From Ylistrum balloti (Eukaryota), in NCBI RefSeq assembly GCF_031769215.1, contig NW_026782013.1, positions 310,001-374,000 of the forward strand: 64,000 bases of DNA. The letters run 5' to 3'. The notes beneath the pieces are model-generated. The model saw only the letters and a list, made by a program, of their open reading frames with translations, did not search any database and had not been told where the DNA came from. Positions 39,801 to 64,000 of the stretch are shown one piece after another. Positions within the stretch are counted from its first letter, which is position 1; each line of letters opens with the position of its first letter. The translations under genes and the position numbers were made by a program.

Positions 39801-42800
39801 TACATCAATTATATCGCAACTCATTTAACAAGTTCTAATAATATAATAAATTGTTCTAAAAATTACTGGAATAAAATGTTAACACACACAGTTGCAAACA
39901 TCTACATTACCACTGCAATACTATTCAGACATGAATTTTATAGTTTTATGATGTTTGAAACAAAATATGCATTCACAGAGCCATTTCGTTGAATCTTTTA
40001 AAAAAAAAACAGACAGCACAGATCAGTAGGGAAGCAGATCTCCAAAAACGTTTTGCATATGTAGGATTAGAGGTCCAGTCATGCCTGGCAGAATCTAATG
40101 GCAGAAAACCAATAGTCTGCAAAATTATATAAAACAATGTCATGTATATACACATCTGAGAAAAGTTTATGAAATTTTGTGAAAGAGAAAGCAAAAAAAA
40201 AAAAAACCCTTATCCTTGGTTTTTCTGAATTTCAGCTCAAACACTCTTAAATTGTAAATTTCAAGCTGCAAGTTGACCAAAATATAGTTAAGTTTATTGT
40301 AAACTATGTCTCTGCAGATTCTGTTTTGTCTTGGCGATTTTCAATGGATAAGGAAAAAGTGTCCTATATGTCCTTTAATGTACATGTATATTGTAATAAA
40401 TTGGTATAGTGTCTTCCTTATCATGTATATAATATATTTGGGTGAAGGCATATAGAGGGTAATGGGGAATGATTTGTTGTATACTTCAGCTTTAACTGAC
40501 ACCGGGAGGGGGACCATGCTGATAGTCGACAGACTGACACGGCTAATGGCTTAGCCGAGAGCTTGACCTTAGGTCAATTGGACTATCAAGGCTTCAGAGG
40601 AGTTCCTCTCCAGAGAACAGATGTGTGTGTGACTGTCTCGCTGGATATTTCGTTGAGGTCTATTACCTCAGGGTTTCTTGTGTGTTGATCTGGGCTAATA
40701 TAGTATGTGTTGTATAAAGTGTAAATAAACTTGTAAATAGAATTTTTGCTGTTGTGATGTATTTCCACTGACTCTGTAGATATATATCCACCCAGTCATG
40801 TTACAATATCTATACTAATCCTGGTCACAAATGTTAACTGTACAAACCTCATTCTCCATGTTTTGTGTGTAATACTCTTTGTTTACATCAGACTTCGGCA
40901 TGTTGTCTTGGATCTTCAATGCTGCATCTCTCACCTGCACAGGTAAGCCTATGGACAAAATCAAGTGTTTATAAGATCTCTCATTAGTACAAGTAGGACT
41001 ATTGTTAGTCAAGTGTTTACAAGATCTCTCATTAGTACAAGTAGGACTATTGTTAGTCAAGTGTTTACAAGATCTCTCATTAGTACAAGTAGGACTATTG
41101 TTAGTCAAGTGTTTACAAGATCTCTCATTAGTACAAGTAGGACTATTGTTAGTCAAGTGTTTACAAGATCTCTCATTAGTACAAGTAGGACTATTGTTAG
41201 TCAAGTGTTTACAAGATCTCTCATTAGTACAAGTAGGACTATCGTTAGTCAAGTGTTTACAAGATCTCTCATTAGTACAAGTAGGACTATTGTTAGTCAA
41301 GTGTTTACAAGATCTCTCATTAGTACAAGTAGGACTATTGTTAGTCAAGTGTTTACAAGATCTCTCATTAGTACAAGTAGGACTATTGTTAGTCAAGTGT
41401 TTACAAGATCTCTCATCAGTATATGTTAGACTCTGACTAGTCAAGTGTTTACAAGATCTCTCATCAGTATATGTTAGACTCTGACTAGTCAAGTGTTTAC
41501 AAAATCTCTCATCAGTATATGTTAGACTCTGACTAGTCAAGTGTTTACAAGATCTCTCATCCGTACATGTAAGACTATAATGGAGTCACTGAATTACAAG
41601 ACCTCCCAATGGTTAAATTTTAGACTGATAAAGTATTTACAAAATTTCTCATTGGTACACATAAAAGTATTGCCAGTTAAAAGATTACTGGCTATAGTCA
41701 ATCAAACAATTACAAGACCTTTCATCAGTACAAGTAATAAGAATTAAGTCATTCATATGAAATGGTGAATATTTTCATTATCTCAGTTGAACAGAGAAAA
41801 ATCAAAATGCAGTTGAATGATTCATTTAAAATTTTAGCGATTCTTGTTGAAAATATATCAATTTCATGAAAATGTACACAAATGCCCCCTCCCCCAAAAG
41901 ATGTCATGAACAGTTTTATTACCATACTCAAGATCTAAGAGGCAAGTCTGACACACATTCTTTATCTTTGAACATGTTTGGCACACTTCAGTCTTTTTGA
42001 ACCTCATACGTGCACCAGGACACCATCTGAACACTGTAAAAGGACGTGCACAAATCTTGCATTCCTTCCCATATTTCTCCTTCATCTGAAAATACAAAAG
42101 CAAACAGGTGTAAGGAAACCTAATTGATGCAAATTCTGCCATTCTACACATATAAGACTCATGAAATTTAATACCATATATGTATACATGTATTTGTAAA
42201 AAATATCTACAATGTTTCCTCTAATTTTAACATCTGAATTCAAATCTGGCACATGATGTACAATGTAATTATGTATAAATATTTTTTGAACTCTCAAGTT
42301 ATAAGTAAAGATTGTCATTGATGTTACATGAATGTATGGCTCAACTCTATAACTCTATCAGGACACAGTGGCACTTCTCAGTTTTTATCCATGTACAATA
42401 ACACTACAATGTCAGCACTTATTGAAACTAAATGACCAGTACCTTTGATTTACATAATAAGTTTGATTCATGATTTACATACTAAAATAGTCTTGAAATG
42501 AAAATGTCTATCTTTTCTAGACACAGCTCAGTTACCTGGTCAGCTCTTGAACACTAAACTTATCTTTTGTTGTTTTAATCTTTCTAAGAAATACTTGTCA
42601 ATGACTAAAAATATTGTTGGGTAAAATTAAGGAGACATGTAATGACTTTTTCCAATCCTATTAAATTTATAGAATTACTTGTCAATGACTTAAAATACTG
42701 TTTGGTAACATTAGAAGAAACATTTCAGGACTATTTCCAACACTGTTATAATTACATGCAAATGTTGTTATGTTTTTGCAAGGTCAAATAGTACTGGTGT

Positions 42801-56476: not shown

Positions 56477-56993
56477 ATGAAGGATATAGAAATTTTTGAC
56501 CGTTACAAATGTCTTGGTATTGTATTTAAACAAAGTAGGAATTTTGCAGAAGCAAAAATTAATCTTGTACGACAGGCTACAAAAGCCAAGTGTGCTCTGT
56601 ATACTAGAATTCATAGTTTAAGATTACCTGTTGACTGTCAATTAATACATTTTGACCAAACAATTGTTCCTATATTGTTATACGGATGTGAAATCTGGGG
56701 TTTCTCAAGCACAGCCTGTATAGACAAAGTACATTTAGATTTTTTGAGAAATGTACTTGGTGTTAAAAAAAGTACACCGAGATATATGTTGTATGGTGAC
56801 ACTGGACGTGTACATATCAAAACACGGATGGTTACTTACTGGGCTAGAATTGTCGAGTCACATGACTGTAAACTTGCTCACATAGTGTACAATTTTTTGT
56901 TGAAATACAATTACTTTAACAATTGCCAGTCTCAGTGGTTACAAGCAGTAAAGTCTACATTGGACAATTGTGGTATGAGTAATATTTGGCATA
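56477..56993 (+). mobile_element. 5'-truncated non-LTR retrotransposon (LINE) ORF2 fragment, post-RT region
   Basis: YKCLGIVF...FDQTIVPILLYGCEIWG...KVHLDFLRNVLGVKKSTPRYMLYGDTGR...RMVTYWARI is typical of the region after the RT domain in L2/CR1-like LINEs. It is cut at 56994 by a CACTA terminus. Confidence 0.85.
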
Positions 56994-57833
56994 CACTACT
57001 GCAGACAGAGGTCATCAAAATACCATTAAAATCTCATGAAGTTATCATTAAAATCATTAAAAGTGTTAAAAATGGCCATTAAATCTTGTATTGATATATT
57101 TTAACAGGTTTCTGCTTAAGCCATTAAAAAGGCACTTAAAATCTTGTTTTAAGATACAATTACAAAGAATTAATTGTCATTTAACACCCAAAATTTGATG
57201 TAACATGCTGTTAAAAAAATTAATGTTGATAAAAGATACTTGAAATTTGTATCTTTGTGTTTTAATTGCACTTAACAGAAAAATAATGGCCATTAAAACG
57301 TTTCCTTAATTTTGTACACGACCCAAGTTCATTTTAATTATTATTACTTTCTTTGCATGACAACAAAGTGACTTAATTGCCATTAACTTTGCTATAAATT
57401 ATTTAATTGCCATTAACAGTCAATGAACAAATGCTTTATCTGAAATTTTATTGAAGGTGTTTTCCAAGTGCCATTAAATTTCAACAACCAATTAATTAAC
57501 AGGCATTAAATTCTTTAAGTAAAAAGTAATTTCATGCAAGTCTATAAATCTCTAAATTTAAGTGTCATTAAAACAATCTTATGTATATATATGCCATTAC
57601 TTTAAATTTGGATACATATGTATTTGACTGGATTTGCAATTGATCACAAATAAAATTGCATTATATAAATCATGTATTTTCTTGGCTTATCAATTCCTAG
57701 GGAAAATTGTAGTTTCTTACATTTTAGTTTGTAATCATAAACATTCAATAAAAAATTGTTGATATTTTTCAATAGACTAAGCTGTGAAGTACACGGCAAA
57801 CATATATCTATACCTTTTGAGTGAAACACTAAT

Positions 57834-59497
57834 TTACATGCGTTTGTACTGAACCTTGTCACTGTTCAAAATCCATATTTTCTCTGTTTCAATCGCTGTC
57901 ACCAGGGGTATTGAAAGGCGGTTTGTCAGAATATAACTACATCTAGCTTTTGCAGATTTTGGCAAGTCATTATTCTGAGCAATTGCAAACCATAGTTTGG
58001 TTTCTGAATCAAAATGGATATCTTTTATCCATTCCACAAAAGCTAAAAATTGTGAACTACATGCATCATTCATGGCTTTATGCTCTACAAAGTATAAAAT
58101 ACGTCGGAAACCAACAAATTTCCCTGACTTAACTTTTCGTTCAGGTGGACCTCTGTCAAATTCACAGCATATAAATGATGAAATAGTAAGTGCGTTGCTT
58201 CTTTCTTTTACTTCAGAACAGTATGACACTTCATGGCGAGTGATTGGATGCGTTTCCTTGTGGTAATAGTACTTGAAGTACCGTTCACAATTACATCCTG
58301 ATGTATTGCACTCTCTATGAATTGCCTTAACATCTCTCTTTTTCAGTACAACATACTTTGCTGAATCACTTTTATTTTGTGACTCTTCTCCAATCAAATC
58401 ATTTACATTCATTTGTAAGGAGTTCAAAGAAATGCGTCCAGAGCTCAACATGTAGTGGCACCAGTCATGTAAAAGGAAGGTTTCTATAGTGGTGGCTTCA
58501 GGATATCGCTTATTTAGAACTCTCTTACAGATCCAGGAATTGAATCTTTCGTAAGTGTACATCCATGTTCTGTAAACTGGCCCGAACCGCCTTAGACCCT
58601 CTGGAATGTCATGTAGAAGACGTATTGTAATGTTCTGCAAATGCAGCGGGAAGTACATTTCTAGCATAACAAGAGCCTTATTTAACTTTCATTCTAAAAT
58701 GTCAATGTCGGTTGCTGTGATACTCTCTTTACAGATTTCAGCTAAGCAGTCAAATAGAAGAAAAAGGGTTTCTCTACATTGCTGCTCTAATAGGCCATGT
58801 AAACAGAATTTAAGAATACCATTTGTGGCGAGTTGTTTCCAGTCATGAGATTTTAAACAAGTAGTTTTACTAATAAAGTTGGATGGTTTTAATCCAAAAC
58901 CTATTGGAACACGAATACTCTTTGCACGCTCATCCGCAAGGATTATTTCAGTTTTCGATAACTGGAATGGGAGATCAGATGTTTTCTTTTCGTCGCACAT
59001 TTATTTTGAGAATTAAACTTTTTTCTCTTATTAGAAATTCTTAGTGTCTCTGTTTCAGTGGTTTCACCTTCGGAGTCGGATTGAAGATTACAAGCAATGT
59101 TTTCACCATGATCAACATTAGCACTAGTGTTGCCTCTGGAAAGAAGATGGAAGCGATTCATTTTCTTTTCAGAATTGATGATTTTTTCCATGTTGACTTT
59201 GTTACCAGTGACCACATTCATAACATTCTGTACTACATCTTTTATTGTGTGACATGCATCGGGGAAGCATTCATTCACTCTGTCATGTCCCTCTAATTTT
59301 GCTAACACATTGTTTTTACATCCAGTGGCAGTGGCAACACAGTTTGCTTGGGTTTTGTTTTTTGTCTTTTCATAAGCTTTTCTGTAGTCTAGCACCTTAG
59401 AGAAATTCCGTTCGGGGGGTTTCAAAGACTCATCTTTGTTTTTTTTCACAAAATGCAAACAGTCTAAACGAAGAACATCATTCTTATCAATTAACAA
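57834..59497 (-). pseudogene. Decayed EnSpm/CACTA transposase (C-terminal half, DUF4218-like region)
   Basis: Motifs ECFPDACHTIKDVV, LKSHDWKQL and LLHDIPEGLRRFGPVYRTWMYTYERFNSW. Frameshift near 59000, in-frame TGA at 58689-58691, N-terminal catalytic part absent. Confidence 0.85.
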
Positions 59498-59731
59498 AAA
59501 TTTTCCTTTTCATAGTTGCACCTCAACTGAAACCAAAGTCCAGGGAAGTGTGGCAACGGCTAGGAGCCAATCTGCAAAACCGGAGAAAATACATGTGTGA
59601 TGAGGACGAAGGAAAACATATTTTAAAACCTGTAAAATCTAGCAGCCACGGTACCGATATTGTGCCAAGTACCAGTTCAGACGGTCCGGATCAATTTACA
59701 ATTGGGCAAATGGTTCAGCTGACCAAAAAGC

Positions 59732-62257
59732 ATGAATAAAAATAGCATGGCATCAGGGATTATTGTATCCACACATATGGATGACATGTTTGTTGATATT
59801 GCCATTCAATCTGTAAATGAAATTTCTTCAGAGGACAGAGACTCAGAGTCTGAACTACCTGAATCTGCAAGTAATGGTGAAACAAACTTATCCAGCAAAC
59901 TAATAAATCATGTCATCAAGTGGAGGAAAGATCGTCTTGCTGCAGCAAATTTGAACAAAAGGAAACAACCAGATGATGATAAACCAAATGCTGAGAAAAT
60001 TAAAAAACATGTGACGGTAACTACTGTTGGAAACAGTTCAGGTGGAAAGGGTACAGAAATTCCAGGGAACAGTTCTGGTGGTAAGAGTACAGAAATTCCA
60101 AGGAAAGGGAGTTCTGGTGGTAAGAGTACAGAAATTCTAAGGAAAGGGGGTTCTGGTGGTAAGAGTACAGAAATTCCAAGGAAAGGGAGTTCAGGTGGTA
60201 AGAGTACAGATAATCCAGGGAACAGTTCTGGTAGTAAGAGTACAGAAATTCCAAGGAAAGGGAGTTCAGGTGGTAAGAGTACAGAAATTCCAAGGAAAGG
60301 GAGTTCAGGTGGTAAGAGTACAGAAATTCCAAGGAAAGGGAGTTCTGGTGGTAAGAGTACAGAAATTCCAAGGAAAGGGAGTTCAGGTGGTAAGAGTACA
60401 GATAATCCAGGGAACAGTTCTGGTAGTAAGAGTACAGAAATTCCAAGGAAAGGGAGTTCAGGTGGTAAGAGTACAGAAATTCCAGGGAACAGTTCTGGTG
60501 GTAAGAGTACAGAAATTCCAAGGAAAGGGAGTTCTGGTGGTAAGAGTACAGAAATTCCAAGGAAAGGGGGTTCTGGTGGTAAGAGTACAGAAATTCCAAG
60601 GAAAGGGAGTTCTGGTGGTAAGAGTACAGAAATTCCAAGGAAAGGGAGTTCAGGTGGTAAGAGTACAGAAAATCCAAGGAAAGGGAGTTCTGGTGGTAAG
60701 AGTACAGAAATTCCAAGGAAAGGGGGTTCTGGTGGTAAGAGTACAGAAAATCCAAGGAAAGGGAGTTCTGGTGGTAAGAGTACAGAAATTCCAAGGAAAG
60801 GGGGTTCTGGTGGTAAGAGTACAGAAAATCCAAGGAAAGGGAGTTCTGGTGGTAAGAGTACAGAGATTCCAAGGAAAGGGGGTTCTGGTGGTAAGAGTAC
60901 AGAAAATCCAAGGAAAGGGAGGTCTGGTGGTAAGAGTACAGAAATTCCAGGGAACAGTTCTGGTGGTAAGAGTACAGAAATTCCAAGGAAAGGGAGTTCT
61001 GGTGGTAAGAGTACAGAAATTCCAAGGAAAGGGAGTTCAGGTGGTAAGAGTACAGATAATCCAGGGAACAGTTCTGGTAGTAAGAGTACAGAAATTCCAA
61101 GGAAAGGGAGTTCAGGTGGTAAGAGTACAGAAATTCCAAGGAAAAGGAGGTCTGGTGGTAAGAGTACAGAAATTCCAAGGAAAGGGGGTTCTGGTGGTAA
61201 GAGTACAGAAATTCCAAGGAAAGGGAGTTCAGGTGGTAAGAGTACAGATAATCCAGGGAACAGTTCTGGTGGTAAGAGTACAGAAATTCCAAGGAAAAGG
61301 AGGTCTGGTGGTAAGAGTACAGAAATTCCAAGGAAAGGGAGTTCAGGTGGTAAGAGTACAGATAATCCAGGGAACAGTTCTGGTGGTAAGAGTACAGAAA
61401 TTCCAAGGAAAAGGAGGTCTGGTGGTAAGAGTACAGATAATCCAGGGAACAGTTCTGGTGGTAAGAGTACAGAAATTCCAGGGAACAGTTCTGGTGGTAA
61501 GAGTACAGAAATTCCAAGGAAAAGGAGGTCTGGTGGTAAGAGTACAGAAATTCCAAGGAAAGGGAGTTCTGTTGGTAAGAGTACAGATAATCAAGGGAAC
61601 AGTTCTGGTGGTAAGAGTACAGAAATTCCAGGGGACTGTTCTGTTGGTAAGAGTACAGAAATTCCAGGGAACAGTTCTGGTGGTAAGAGTACAGAAATTC
61701 CAAGGAAAGGGAGTTATGTTGGTAAGAGTACAGATAATCCAGGGAACAGTTCTGGTGGTAAGAGTACAGAAATTCCAGGGAACAGTTCTGGTGGTAAGAG
61801 TACAGAAATTCCAGGGAACAGGTCTGGTGGTAAGAGTACAGAAATTCCAGGGAACAGGTCTGGTGGTAAGAGTACAGAAATTCCAGGGAACAGTTCTGGT
61901 GGTAAGAGTACAGAAATTCCCAAGTTCAAAAGTTTTGTGTTGATGGAGTATTCCAACGAACAATTATATTGGGGAATTTTACAAACGGCTGACATGACAA
62001 ATGATTTCATCATAAGGAACACTTGCAAACCATTTTACAAAGACCAGAAAGTTTCAATTGACGAATTCGAGATGAAAATCAGTACCCGAGATTATGAAGT
62101 AAATCCTGACATGAAATATTGTGTATGGAAACTTGCTTGTGAAAACCAGTTCATTAAACTTTTACCTAAAGGGAAATTTGGAACAATAGTAATGAAAGAC
62201 GACCACATGAAGGACATGTTTTTCAAGGAATTTCAGAAGAATTTGGAAAAATACTGA
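59732..62257 (+). CDS. 841-codon accessory ORF inside the CACTA element, with a central Ser/Gly/Lys-rich repeat
   Basis: One open frame: about 100 unique aa, about 50 SSGGKSTEIPRKG / NSSGGKSTEIPG units, then about 110 unique aa. A probable upstream continuation lies in another frame (59548-59739). Function unknown. Confidence 0.55.
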   Translation: MNKNSMASGIIVSTHMDDMFVDIAIQSVNEISSEDRDSESELPESASNGETNLSSKLINHVIKWRKDRLAAANLNKRKQPDDDKPNAEKIKKHVTVTTVGNSSGGKGTEIPGNSSGGKSTEIPRKGSSGGKSTEILRKGGSGGKSTEIPRKGSSGGKSTDNPGNSSGSKSTEIPRKGSSGGKSTEIPRKGSSGGKSTEIPRKGSSGGKSTEIPRKGSSGGKSTDNPGNSSGSKSTEIPRKGSSGGKSTEIPGNSSGGKSTEIPRKGSSGGKSTEIPRKGGSGGKSTEIPRKGSSGGKSTEIPRKGSSGGKSTENPRKGSSGGKSTEIPRKGGSGGKSTENPRKGSSGGKSTEIPRKGGSGGKSTENPRKGSSGGKSTEIPRKGGSGGKSTENPRKGRSGGKSTEIPGNSSGGKSTEIPRKGSSGGKSTEIPRKGSSGGKSTDNPGNSSGSKSTEIPRKGSSGGKSTEIPRKRRSGGKSTEIPRKGGSGGKSTEIPRKGSSGGKSTDNPGNSSGGKSTEIPRKRRSGGKSTEIPRKGSSGGKSTDNPGNSSGGKSTEIPRKRRSGGKSTDNPGNSSGGKSTEIPGNSSGGKSTEIPRKRRSGGKSTEIPRKGSSVGKSTDNQGNSSGGKSTEIPGDCSVGKSTEIPGNSSGGKSTEIPRKGSYVGKSTDNPGNSSGGKSTEIPGNSSGGKSTEIPGNRSGGKSTEIPGNRSGGKSTEIPGNSSGGKSTEIPKFKSFVLMEYSNEQLYWGILQTADMTNDFIIRNTCKPFYKDQKVSIDEFEMKISTRDYEVNPDMKYCVWKLACENQFIKLLPKGKFGTIVMKDDHMKDMFFKEFQKNLEKY
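60035..61920 (+). repeat. 36/39-bp coding minisatellite within the CACTA accessory ORF
   Basis: Units GAGTTCTGGTGGTAAGAGTACAGAAATTCCAAGGAAAGG (39 bp) and CAGTTCTGGTGGTAAGAGTACAGAAATTCCAGGGAA (36 bp); both lengths are multiples of 3. Confidence 0.95.
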
Positions 62258-64000
62258 CTAGATTTCACATAATTTCAGCCTAGATATGATGTAGATGAAA
62301 ATGTATACAAAACAAAGAACATTACAAGTTTTGTCAGACTTTATTTTTCTGTTCTATTAAATATATGTGTATACAAATAACATCAATACAAACATGATTG
62401 CAATACAAGTGGCATTGCATATCATAGAGTTCTCTCATACTATAAAAATGATATTAGCATATCGTACAAGCTAGGTATAAATTACCTTTTTTTCATTCAG
62501 GGCAGGAAGTCTTGCATCCTAAATATTTATGTAAGACAAATTGTCTTACATTATTCTACATTCTCTGCACTACTGGAAAATTTCATAGTAAAATGGAAGG
62601 AACATTCATGTTGAAAAACTTGTCTAATTTCTGCACATTCTTTTCATTTTACCATTCAAAGTGATAGATTGAAGGCATCCTTTCAATATTGTAACAATAG
62701 TGCTTTCACAACATAATGATGTAATAAATTTTCTAATGATGCAGAGAATAGATATACATGTCTTATTATATATTCCATAGATAATCAAGAATGCCATATA
62801 ATTTAATGGTTATTAAAAATCTAGAAAAATATACCTGTAGTAGCAATTATTCCTGAAAAATGTAAGGTGATATATTGCTTCTCTTTAAGGGGCATTAATG
62901 TTCATGGCTGTTAAAATACCATTTTTGTATTTGAAATACACCATTAAAACATGGAAGTATTTTTTATTTTAATGGGCTGTTTTCTTGTCCCCATTAATTT
63001 TGTACCTTTAATAGTAATTAATTAATGAAAAAGATCAAGTTAATTTCCATTAACAAAAACCATCAAAAAAATTTGATAGGCGTTAAAAATAAAAATGGTT
63101 CCCTTTAATTGCCATTAAATTGGCGAGCTTTTATATTCCTTCCAAAAATATATTTAATAGCTATTAATTTTCCTTTTTTAACAGCAATTAAAGGTACAAA
63201 ATTAACAACTTAATTAATAGCTTTTTAATGGGAAATCTTAATGGGCTATTTAATGGTCATTTTAATGGCTTGTATGTGCAGTAGTGGAGGTTAATTAAAT
63301 AAAGAAATCTGAAAATCTGAAAAATCTAAATTATTGACTTTAACCAAGATCCCGATATGTCATTAGTCAACTGTATCGGCATGGAACTGAAAATTTGCTA
63401 CAGATCAAGTTATGGTTCGACTTTATCAGTGCCATATCAGACTTGAGATCCTGGTCCATTTAAAGCTTGACAATATCAACATGCTATTAAACCTTGGGTA
63501 CTGGCCATAGTTGGTCTAAAATTATTTTAAGTGTAGTTAGCCTTCGGTCTTTGTTGGAGTCAAGAATTGACCTTTAGTTTTCAAGACACTTATTCAACAC
63601 CCAGTTCATACGGCATTTTGCAATAGATTTAATCATTAATACTTAATATGAAATTAAATACTATATTAACCTTGTGGGATATGTTTTTATTACATAATTT
63701 AAATGGCTGAGTAATTTACTTGAAGTTGTACTGCTATAAACTTAAAAGGGACAGCTTACACTCTATCGTAACTATTTAGATCTTCCAGATGTAAAGAAGG
63801 CTTTTATATATTACATTTCTACTTCAACTATTGTTTACAGTATCTAACCTATAAGTACAGAACACAAAACACAAAAGCCCTGACTAAGAGTTGGGATTAC
63901 TTGCGGACAGTTAAATTACTAATATACAAACAACTTTAATGAGTTTTCATTTCATATAAGATTGTATGAAACAAGTCTTTTAGAAGTTTTTAAGAAACTT

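What the first reader, a model, noticed from the sequence alone, without database searches (positions are those of the whole stretch)
59732..62257. CACTA accessory ORF with about 50 repeats resembling the histone H3 N-terminal tail
Seen: the repeat reads RK-GSS-GGK-STEI-PRK and is flanked by unique domains in the same frame. Established: H3 residues 8-18 are RK-ST-GGK-A-PRK, histone mimicry is known in viruses, and some plant DNA transposons encode anti-silencing proteins. Inference (speculative): a transposon-encoded multivalent decoy for H3K9/K14/S10 writers or readers, or alternatively a basic disordered DNA-binding linker with PRKRR NLS-like variants. Caveat: the repeat is also stop-free in other frames, so openness alone is not evidence of selection.
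Basis: partly seen in the sequence, partly recalled or inferred. Interest (0 to 1): 0.7.

Follow-up and report, generated by a model that had tools for sequence, protein, structure and literature searches.

The report
Repeat-swollen linker in dead CACTA gene
The 50-fold peptide repeat is real. It is a recently expanded tandem repeat in the floppy linker of a broken scallop CACTA transposon accessory gene, and its likeness to the histone H3 tail is no more than its amino-acid composition would give by chance.

Summary
ORF 59732-62257 (841 aa) carries 50 tandem units (31 of 13 aa, 19 of 12 aa) between two unique ends. It lies inside a CACTA element, 56994-63286.

The histone-mimic reading does not hold:
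- The unit matches the scallop's own H3 tail no better than 31% of shuffled units do.
- No ARKS/T and no GKxP motif is present, and 19 units lack RK altogether.
- The closest relative from elsewhere (P0020) has the same two ends but a single, non-H3-like linker segment.
- The only other copy in this genome has 11 units, with an in-frame stop and a frameshift.
- Other family members carry unrelated repeats at the same position.
- AlphaFold2 predicts that linker to be disordered.

The window copy is also defective. A 3.4-kb internal deletion removed the 5' part of this gene and half of the transposase. A 1-nt insertion at about 59737 cuts the conserved upstream coding piece from the ORF, so the ATG at 59732 is fortuitous.

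What is mildly new is the gene family itself. It is an unannotated accessory protein paired divergently with Tnp2/DUF4218 transposases. Its parts are a helical domain with an LQNRRKY motif, an SH3-like barrel, a disordered basic linker and a confident beta-rich C-terminal domain with no clear PDB match.

This scan had not noted this element before.

The parts
56994..63286 (.). Internally deleted (non-autonomous) CACTA DNA transposon copy, 6.3 kb
   Evidence: About 96% identical over its whole length to C1183:6516-14739, which is 8.2 kb and carries 3.4 kb more in the middle. The flanks outside these limits do not match.
56994..57003 (+). Left terminal inverted repeat, CACTACTGCA
   Evidence: Read directly. 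The homology with the C1183 copy starts exactly here.
63277..63286 (+). Right terminal inverted repeat, TGCAGTAGTG
   Evidence: Perfect 10-nt complement of the left TIR. Homology with C1183 and C980 ends here.
57012..57580 (.). Left subterminal repeats (TTAATGG-type motifs)
   Evidence: the repeat finder families D1-D8. Six exact TTAATGGC sites lie at 57075-57477.
62800..63273 (.). Right subterminal repeats (TTAATGG-type motifs)
57834..59497 (-). 3' remnant of the Tnp2-type transposase gene, in three ORF pieces; the DUF4218 part lies at about 58452-58733
   Evidence: Pfam DUF4218, E 2e-6, above the cut-off; genome search hit at the same place. The Transposase_21 part is missing here but present in C1183. 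It is intact in the relative at C982: 647 aa, PF02992 E 3e-25.
59482..59496 (.). Junction of the 3.4-kb internal deletion
   Evidence: The window lacks C1183:8835-12211. That stretch encodes the transposase N-half and the N-terminal part of ORF2.
59518..59738 (+). Conserved ORF2 coding piece in another frame (WQRLGANLQNRRKY motif and first half of the SH3-like barrel), ending in TAA
   Evidence: Continuous with the downstream frame in the C1183 copy. Aligns with the family's invariant LQNRRKY block.
59737..59737 (+). 1-nt difference (extra T) that shifts the frame and creates the TAA and the apparent ATG start
   Evidence: Window CATGAATAAAAAT against C1183 CATGAA-AAAAAT. The family alignment shows the C1183 frame is the ancestral one.
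59732..60034 (+). N flank of the 841-aa ORF: second half of the barrel module, the ELPE...IKWRKDRL block and a KRK...KIKK basic cluster
   Evidence: Aligns with P0020, P0002 and the other family members.
60035..61920 (+). Coding minisatellite: 50 units of 39 or 36 nt within the linker
   Evidence: An exact 177-nt duplicate at offset 654 shows recent block duplication.
61919..62257 (+). C-terminal domain (112 aa): seven strands plus a C-terminal helix, then the stop codon
   Evidence: AlphaFold2 pLDDT 93.1, pTM 0.85. 67% identical to P0020. No significant PDB match: Foldseek E > 0.2 and best VIA Z 3.9.

Best explanation
The ORF is the 3' remainder of the accessory gene (ORF2) of a low-copy scallop CACTA (Tnp2/DUF4218) transposon.

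In intact relatives, ORF2 is transcribed divergently from the transposase. It encodes, in order:
1. a helical domain ending in an invariant LQNRRKY motif;
2. a small SH3-like beta barrel;
3. a disordered linker, basic and rich in Ser/Thr, with NLS-like clusters;
4. a beta-rich C-terminal domain.

The 50-unit array is a lineage-specific tandem amplification, by slippage or unequal exchange, of a short linker segment just upstream of the C-terminal domain. It is tolerated because the linker has no fixed structure. It stays open because the unit has no stop codon in most frames and both unit lengths are multiples of three.

The window copy is a dead derivative. It has a 3.4-kb internal deletion and a 1-nt frameshift, so the 841-aa ORF probably makes no functional protein.

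Inferred, not shown: by analogy with TnpA of En/Spm, intact ORF2 proteins probably enter the nucleus and help transposition by binding the TTAATGG subterminal repeats or chromatin, with the linker acting as a flexible tether.
For: - Element limits, TIRs and subterminal repeats.
- Transposase identity.
- Pairing with the transposase: 4 of 5 DUF4218 loci in the genome lie next to an ORF2 relative. At C982 and C705 the coordinates show divergent orientation, as in the window and C1183.
- Family and architecture: 115 representatives at E <= 1e-3 and 30 at <= 1e-30; alignments.
- Domains in the P0010 model: helices 66-157, barrel 189-254, linker 266-339 with pLDDT < 50, C-terminal domain 348-461. 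The barrel matches Tudor/KOW/PWWP/SH3 folds at Z 5.5-6.9.
- The linker is hypervariable. Its length is 55-213 aa in relatives against 657 aa here, with similar composition.
- Unrelated repeats sit at or near the same place: P0009 (7 aa, about 16 copies), P0015 (33 aa), P0002 (20 aa) and L015 (8 aa, 3 copies); P0019 has a 10-aa repeat.
- P0020, the nearest relative, has one ...NTTEIP|KFK segment where the window has 50 units.
- The C1183 copy has 11 units with a TAA and a +1 shift.
- Distinct variants among units are 6 synonymous to 15 non-synonymous, spread 6/6/9 over the three codon positions, which looks neutral.
- Deletion and frameshift in the window copy.
Against: - The window array has no stop over 1.9 kb, and both unit lengths keep the frame. 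This could reflect some past selection for coding while the element was active.
- pN/pS between the two copies over the unique parts is 0.47. With 21 differences and p = 0.10 this is inconclusive.
- No function of ORF2 is shown. DNA binding to the subterminal repeats is analogy only.
Confidence: 0.8

Rival explanations
1. Histone H3-tail mimic: the array is a transposon-encoded multivalent decoy for H3K9, S10 or K14 writers and readers, and it blunts silencing.
For: The 13-aa unit can be laid on H3 residues 8-18 as RK / S[ST] / GGK / PRK when two gaps are allowed. Histone mimicry by short motifs in disordered regions is known in viruses and in G9a (PMC6028506). RKxS resembles a basophilic kinase site and occurs 20 times.
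Against: - 31% of composition-preserving shuffles match the scallop H3 tail as well.
- 0 ARK[ST], 0 GK.P, and PRKG fails the G9a motif at position -2 (PMC10611923).
- 19 of 50 units have no RK.
- The array is absent from the closest relative and from all 115 family representatives. No array-bearing protein was found by the word search.
- The sister copy is short and broken.
- The window gene itself is truncated and frameshifted.
Confidence: 0.03
2. Adaptive linker expansion: a longer basic, phosphorylatable, NLS-rich linker improves ORF2 function (nuclear import, non-specific DNA binding or condensation), and the expansion was selected while the element was active.
For: PRKRR units (4 copies) and other K/R clusters give 9 NLS-like hits in the linker. 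NLS-like clusters recur in the linkers of relatives. The frame is intact over 1.9 kb. Several family members independently carry repeats in this linker.
Against: - Unit variants look neutral.
- Copy number differs five-fold between the only two copies.
- The copy with the long array is the deleted, frameshifted one, so expansion after the gene's death is at least as likely. An exact 177-nt duplicate inside the array, against 4% divergence between the copies, points to recent growth.
Confidence: 0.12
3. Assembly artefact: the 50-unit length is an over-expansion or collapse error of the assembler, not the true allele.
For: Contig C980 ends inside the same array. This shows that the repeat troubles the assembly.
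Against: The array has an ordered, non-periodic succession of 16 unit types and unique flanks on both sides within one 64-kb stretch. Read support could not be checked here.
Confidence: 0.05

Closest known systems
En/Spm (CACTA) transposons of plants, with transposase TnpD and accessory protein TnpA
   Same: CACTA termini, clustered subterminal short repeats, a Tnp2-type transposase (PF02992 and DUF4218 in relatives) and a second, non-catalytic gene inside the element.
   Different: Here the two genes are divergently arranged rather than spliced from one transcript. ORF2 has no detectable sequence similarity to plant TnpA families: no Pfam hit, including PF03004 and PF03017. The host is a bivalve. 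A 3-bp target duplication is not evident.
Internal minisatellites and deletion derivatives of DNA transposons (dSpm/Ds-type non-autonomous copies)
   Same: An internal deletion removes coding sequence but keeps both ends. A tandem repeat array varies in copy number between copies.
   Different: The array lies inside a coding linker and keeps one long reading frame.
Histone H3 mimics (G9a ARKT, influenza NS1 ARSK)
   Same: A short basic motif in a disordered region; an RK dipeptide is present in 31 units.
   Different: There is no A-R-K-S/T core, the motif is not conserved in relatives, and the similarity is not above composition (PMC6028506).
SH3-like small beta-barrels (Tudor, KOW, PWWP, chromo)
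   Same: The middle domain of the family superposes on these folds at Z 5.5-6.9, with 50-77 residues aligned.
   Different: The Z values are below the tool's own caution line of 8, there is no sequence-level match and no aromatic cage was examined. In the window this barrel is split by the frameshift.

Membership tests
CACTA (En/Spm) superfamily of DNA transposons | Terminal inverted repeats beginning with CACTA | tested here: met
   CACTACTGCA at 56994 and its 10-nt complement ending at 63286. The same ends occur in the C1183 and C980 copies.
CACTA (En/Spm) superfamily of DNA transposons | Tnp2-type transposase (Pfam Transposase_21 with DUF4218) | tested here: met
   The window keeps only the DUF4218 part (E 2e-6). 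C1183 has weak Transposase_21 pieces plus DUF4218. The relative at C982 is intact: 647 aa, PF02992 E 3e-25 and PF13960 E 1e-12.
CACTA (En/Spm) superfamily of DNA transposons | Subterminal arrays of short repeats | tested here: met
   TTAATGGC occurs 10 times in the window against 1.76 expected, and 8 of the 10 lie within the element's ends. Repeat families are listed.
CACTA (En/Spm) superfamily of DNA transposons | 3-bp target-site duplication | tested here: inconclusive
   The window flanks are ATA and GAG, with no duplication. The C1183 copy is flanked by TAGT on both sides, which is 4 bp.
Histone H3 tail mimics | A-R-K-S/T core (H3K9/K27-type motif used by G9a and HP1 chromodomains) | tested here: not met
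   There is no ARK[ST] in the 841 aa. The unit reads IPRKG. Motif as described in PMC6028506 and PMC10611923.
Histone H3 tail mimics | Fit to the published G9a substrate motif [GCSAKLN]-R-K-[TGQSVMALNKER] | tested here: not met
   There are only 2 matches (KRKQ in the N flank and one variant unit, LRKG). The canonical PRKG fails at position -2 (PMC10611923).
Histone H3 tail mimics | G-K-x-P context of H3K14 (GCN5 recognition; from my own knowledge of the GCN5-H3 peptide structures) | tested here: not met
   0 GK.P. The unit reads GGKSTEIP, with P at +5.
Histone H3 tail mimics | Similarity to the H3 tail beyond amino-acid composition | tested here: not met
   Smith-Waterman score 28 against the scallop's own H3 residues 1-40. 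31% of 5000 shuffled units score at least as high, and 5.9% with soft gaps.
Histone H3 tail mimics | Conservation of the mimic motif among relatives | tested here: not met
   P0020 has no array. P0002 has a different 20-aa repeat. None of the 115 representatives carries the unit. The C1183 copy is broken.
Histone H3 tail mimics | The protein is made, and it is modified or bound by H3-tail factors | not testable with these tools

The most novel reading that the evidence does not exclude
The intact ORF2 family could be a previously undescribed chromatin-directed accessory protein of animal CACTA transposons. Its SH3/Tudor-like barrel and its C-terminal beta domain would read chromatin or DNA, either to target insertion or to escape silencing. 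The weak best structural neighbours of the C-terminal domain are BAH, Tudor and PWWP readers and MazF. The repeat-prone linker would set the spacing or valency. A weak Atlas neighbour (DUF8039, found with plant Transposase_24) hints at a deep link to plant TnpA-type proteins.
Probability: 0.1. Interest if true: 0.55.

Novelty: new member of a known kind. Interest (0 to 1): 0.2.

Why it matters
As a histone mimic it would have been a striking anti-silencing device, but the evidence removes that reading. What remains is ordinary transposon decay together with a coding minisatellite.

There is a useful by-product. A compact, unannotated accessory-gene family of animal CACTA elements is now defined. 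It has a clear four-part architecture and a confidently folded C-terminal domain with no clear match in the PDB. This gives people who annotate bivalve genomes a handle for these elements, and a candidate for the unknown animal counterpart of plant TnpA.

Tried and rejected
- Pfam on the whole ORF, on both ends, on C1183 pieces and on 30 family members gave nothing for ORF2.
- A splice acceptor seemed to lie at about 59515. I rejected it because the pyrimidine run is coding (KIFLFIVAPQLK) and aligns with relatives.
- Foldseek and VIA searches of the C-terminal domain gave no significant match: E > 0.2 and best Z 3.9.
- Foldseek on the full-length relative gave only weak eL21, Tudor, KOW and PWWP rows.
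- ESM Atlas on the C-terminal domain gave PemK-like features below the recognition threshold; I treated this as noise.
- ESM Atlas on P0010 gave TM 0.18-0.30 to DUF8039; I kept it only as a lead.
- The word-based protein search with the whole 841-aa ORF found nothing at E <= 1e-3, but repeat words saturate the candidate list.
- A literature search for animal or mollusc CACTA accessory genes found nothing relevant.
- P0108 in the representative search is a bacterial repeat protein and a false positive.
- The transposase context of the paralogues at C980 (about 90 kb) and C1307 was not confirmed by tblastn.
Full report
**1. The observation**

The ORF at 59732..62257 (+, 841 aa) exists. Tandem Repeats Finder reports one array at 60035-61920, with period 39, 49.7 copies and 88% matches, plus a 114-nt higher-order period.

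The translation parses into 50 contiguous units of 16 sequence types:
- 31 units of 13 aa, consensus RKGSSGGKSTEIP.
- 19 units of 12 aa, GNSSGGKSTEIP. These differ by a 3-nt deletion plus substitutions and have no RK.

The ends are unique and in frame. Openness alone therefore says nothing.

**2. The context is a CACTA element, and this copy is defective**

BLAST against the only other copies in the genome, C1183 and the end of C980, puts the element at 56994-63286.

- The element starts with CACTACTGCA and ends with the perfect 10-nt complement.
- It has clustered TTAATGG-type subterminal repeats. Exact TTAATGGC occurs 10 times in the window against 1.8 expected, with 8 of the 10 in the element's two ends.
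- On the minus strand, 57834-59497 is the 3' part of a Tnp2-type transposase (DUF4218).

The C1183 copy is 8.2 kb. It has 3.4 kb (C1183:8835-12211) that the window lacks between 59482 and 59496. That stretch holds the Transposase_21 part and an upstream coding piece of ORF2. The window copy is therefore an internally deleted, non-autonomous derivative.

A more distant relative at C982 has an intact 647-aa transposase (PF02992 E 3e-25, DUF4218 E 1e-12).

A target-site duplication is not evident in the window. C1183 is flanked by TAGT on both sides.

**3. The ATG at 59732 is fortuitous**

Upstream, 59518-59738 is open in another frame. It encodes ...EVWQRLGANLQNRRKY...TIGQMVQLTKKHE and then a stop. 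In C1183 the same sequence lacks one T (CATGAA-AAAAAT against CATGAATAAAAAT) and runs straight into the N flank and the repeats.

The LQNRRKY block is invariant in all relatives, and the break falls in the middle of a conserved small barrel. So the C1183 frame is the ancestral one and the window carries a frameshift.

The apparent splice acceptor at about 59515 is coding sequence (KIFLFIVAPQLK) that aligns with relatives. No intron is needed.

**4. ORF2 is a real but unannotated gene family**

A protein search of the genome with the C-terminal domain found diverged paralogues with intact frames and no 13-aa repeat: L015, 393 aa, and L020, 373 aa.

A word search with L015 gave three proteins. 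A profile of five members against 1.84 billion representatives gave 115 hits at E <= 1e-3 and 30 at <= 1e-30. None has a name or a Pfam domain.

Within this genome, 4 of the 5 DUF4218 loci lie next to an ORF2 relative. At C982 and C705 the arrangement is divergent, as in the window and C1183. This supports ORF2 as the accessory gene of this CACTA lineage.

AlphaFold2 gives these results:

| Region | Model | Result |
|---|---|---|
| Helical domain | P0010, residues 66-157 | Helices |
| Small beta barrel | P0010, residues 189-254 | Matches Tudor/KOW/PWWP/SH3 folds at Z 5.5-6.9, below the tool's caution line of 8 |
| Linker | P0010, residues 266-339 | pLDDT < 50, predicted disordered |
| C-terminal domain | P0010, residues 348-461 | Folded |
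| C-terminal domain | Window's own domain, 112 aa | pLDDT 93.1, pTM 0.85, seven strands plus a C-terminal helix |

The window's C-terminal domain has no significant PDB match: Foldseek E > 0.2, best VIA Z 3.9.

**5. What the repeat is**

It sits exactly in the family's disordered linker.

- Linker length is 55-213 aa in relatives and 657 aa here, with similar composition: K+R 0.14-0.25, S+T 0.14-0.37, and few hydrophobic residues.
- Other members carry unrelated tandem repeats at or near the same place: P0009 (7-aa unit, about 16 copies), P0015 (33-aa unit), P0002 (20-aa unit, 5 copies) and L015 (8-aa unit, 3 copies); P0019 has a 10-aa unit.
- The closest relative, P0020, is 67% identical in the C-terminal domain. 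It has the same N-side block (HVIKWKKERL) and the same junction (...NTTEIP|KFKNFVLMEY), but only one such segment and no array.
- The sister copy in C1183 has 11 units, with an in-frame TAA in unit 9 and a +1 shift in the last unit. Its C-terminal domain has two 1-nt deletions and a TAT>TAA change, shared with C980.
- Distinct nucleotide variants among the window's units are 6 synonymous to 15 non-synonymous, spread 6/6/9 over the three codon positions. This looks neutral.
- An exact 177-nt duplicate at offset 654 inside the array, against about 4% divergence between the copies, shows recent block duplication.
- pN/pS between the two copies over the unique parts is 0.47 from 21 differences (p = 0.10), which is inconclusive.

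**6. The H3-tail resemblance**

I took H3 from the scallop's own histone cluster; its tail is the canonical one.

- With BLOSUM62 and gap penalties -11/-1, the unit trimer scores 28 against residues 1-40. 31% of 5000 composition-preserving shuffles of the unit score at least as high. With soft gaps the figure is 5.9%.
- The 841 aa contain no ARK[ST] and no GK.P.
- The published four-residue G9a motif is matched only twice, and never by the canonical PRKG (motif from PMC10611923; ARKS/ARKT/ARSK mimics from PMC6028506).
- 19 of the 50 units lack RK.
- None of the 115 family representatives carries the unit. A word search with the whole ORF found nothing, but its sensitivity is limited because repeat words saturate the candidate list.

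**7. Verdict**

The headline interpretation, an H3-tail decoy, is not supported.

The most likely account is a coding minisatellite that grew in the unstructured linker of a CACTA accessory gene, preserved here in a dead, internally deleted copy.

That intact ORF2 proteins act like TnpA, by entering the nucleus and binding the subterminal repeats, is inference by analogy and is not shown.

**8. Limits**

Transcription and read support for the 50-unit length are untested.
- The helical domain was not searched on its own.

Noticed in passing
L033:3353-5296 (+) = G000:C982: A diverged relative of the element has an intact 647-aa Tnp2 transposase (PF02992 E 3e-25, DUF4218 E 1e-12). An ORF2 relative runs off the contig start in divergent orientation. 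This may be a still-active CACTA copy in this scallop genome.
   Followed up: partly
L011 (C1183:6001-15500) and L009 (end of C980): C1183 and the end of C980 share the flank beyond the right TIR and the same disabling mutations in ORF2. They are probably one locus assembled twice (haplotigs) or a segmental duplication. C980 breaks off inside the array.
   Followed up: partly
window 56477-57082 (+): A 201-aa ORF abuts and crosses the left TIR. It has no Pfam hit. From memory, its LLYGCEIWG-type stretch recalls the C-terminal part of non-LTR retrotransposon reverse transcriptases, so the CACTA copy may lie in an older retroelement.
   Followed up: partly
window 40815-41540: This stretch is open on both strands (241 aa on the minus strand; 154 and 144 aa on the plus strand). 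It gives only a weak low-complexity Pfam hit (Fibrinogen_BP, below the cut-off). It is probably another tandem repeat.
   Followed up: no
P0010 residues 185-283 (family barrel): ESM Atlas structural neighbours include plant clusters carrying DUF8039, one of them together with Transposase_24, the plant CACTA TnpA-type family. TM is only 0.18-0.30. This is a lead to a possible deep link between animal ORF2 and plant accessory proteins.
   Followed up: no
P0017 (643 aa): This family member carries two tandem copies of the helical LxNRRKY module and no C-terminal domain, so the N-terminal module can occur on its own and be duplicated.
   Followed up: no
P0002 residues about 420-540: Its 20-aa linker repeat contains KGKKSTES. 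This may share ancestry with the window's KGSSGGKSTEI, so the repeat-prone segment may be older than the scallop array even though the H3-like features are not shared.
   Followed up: partly
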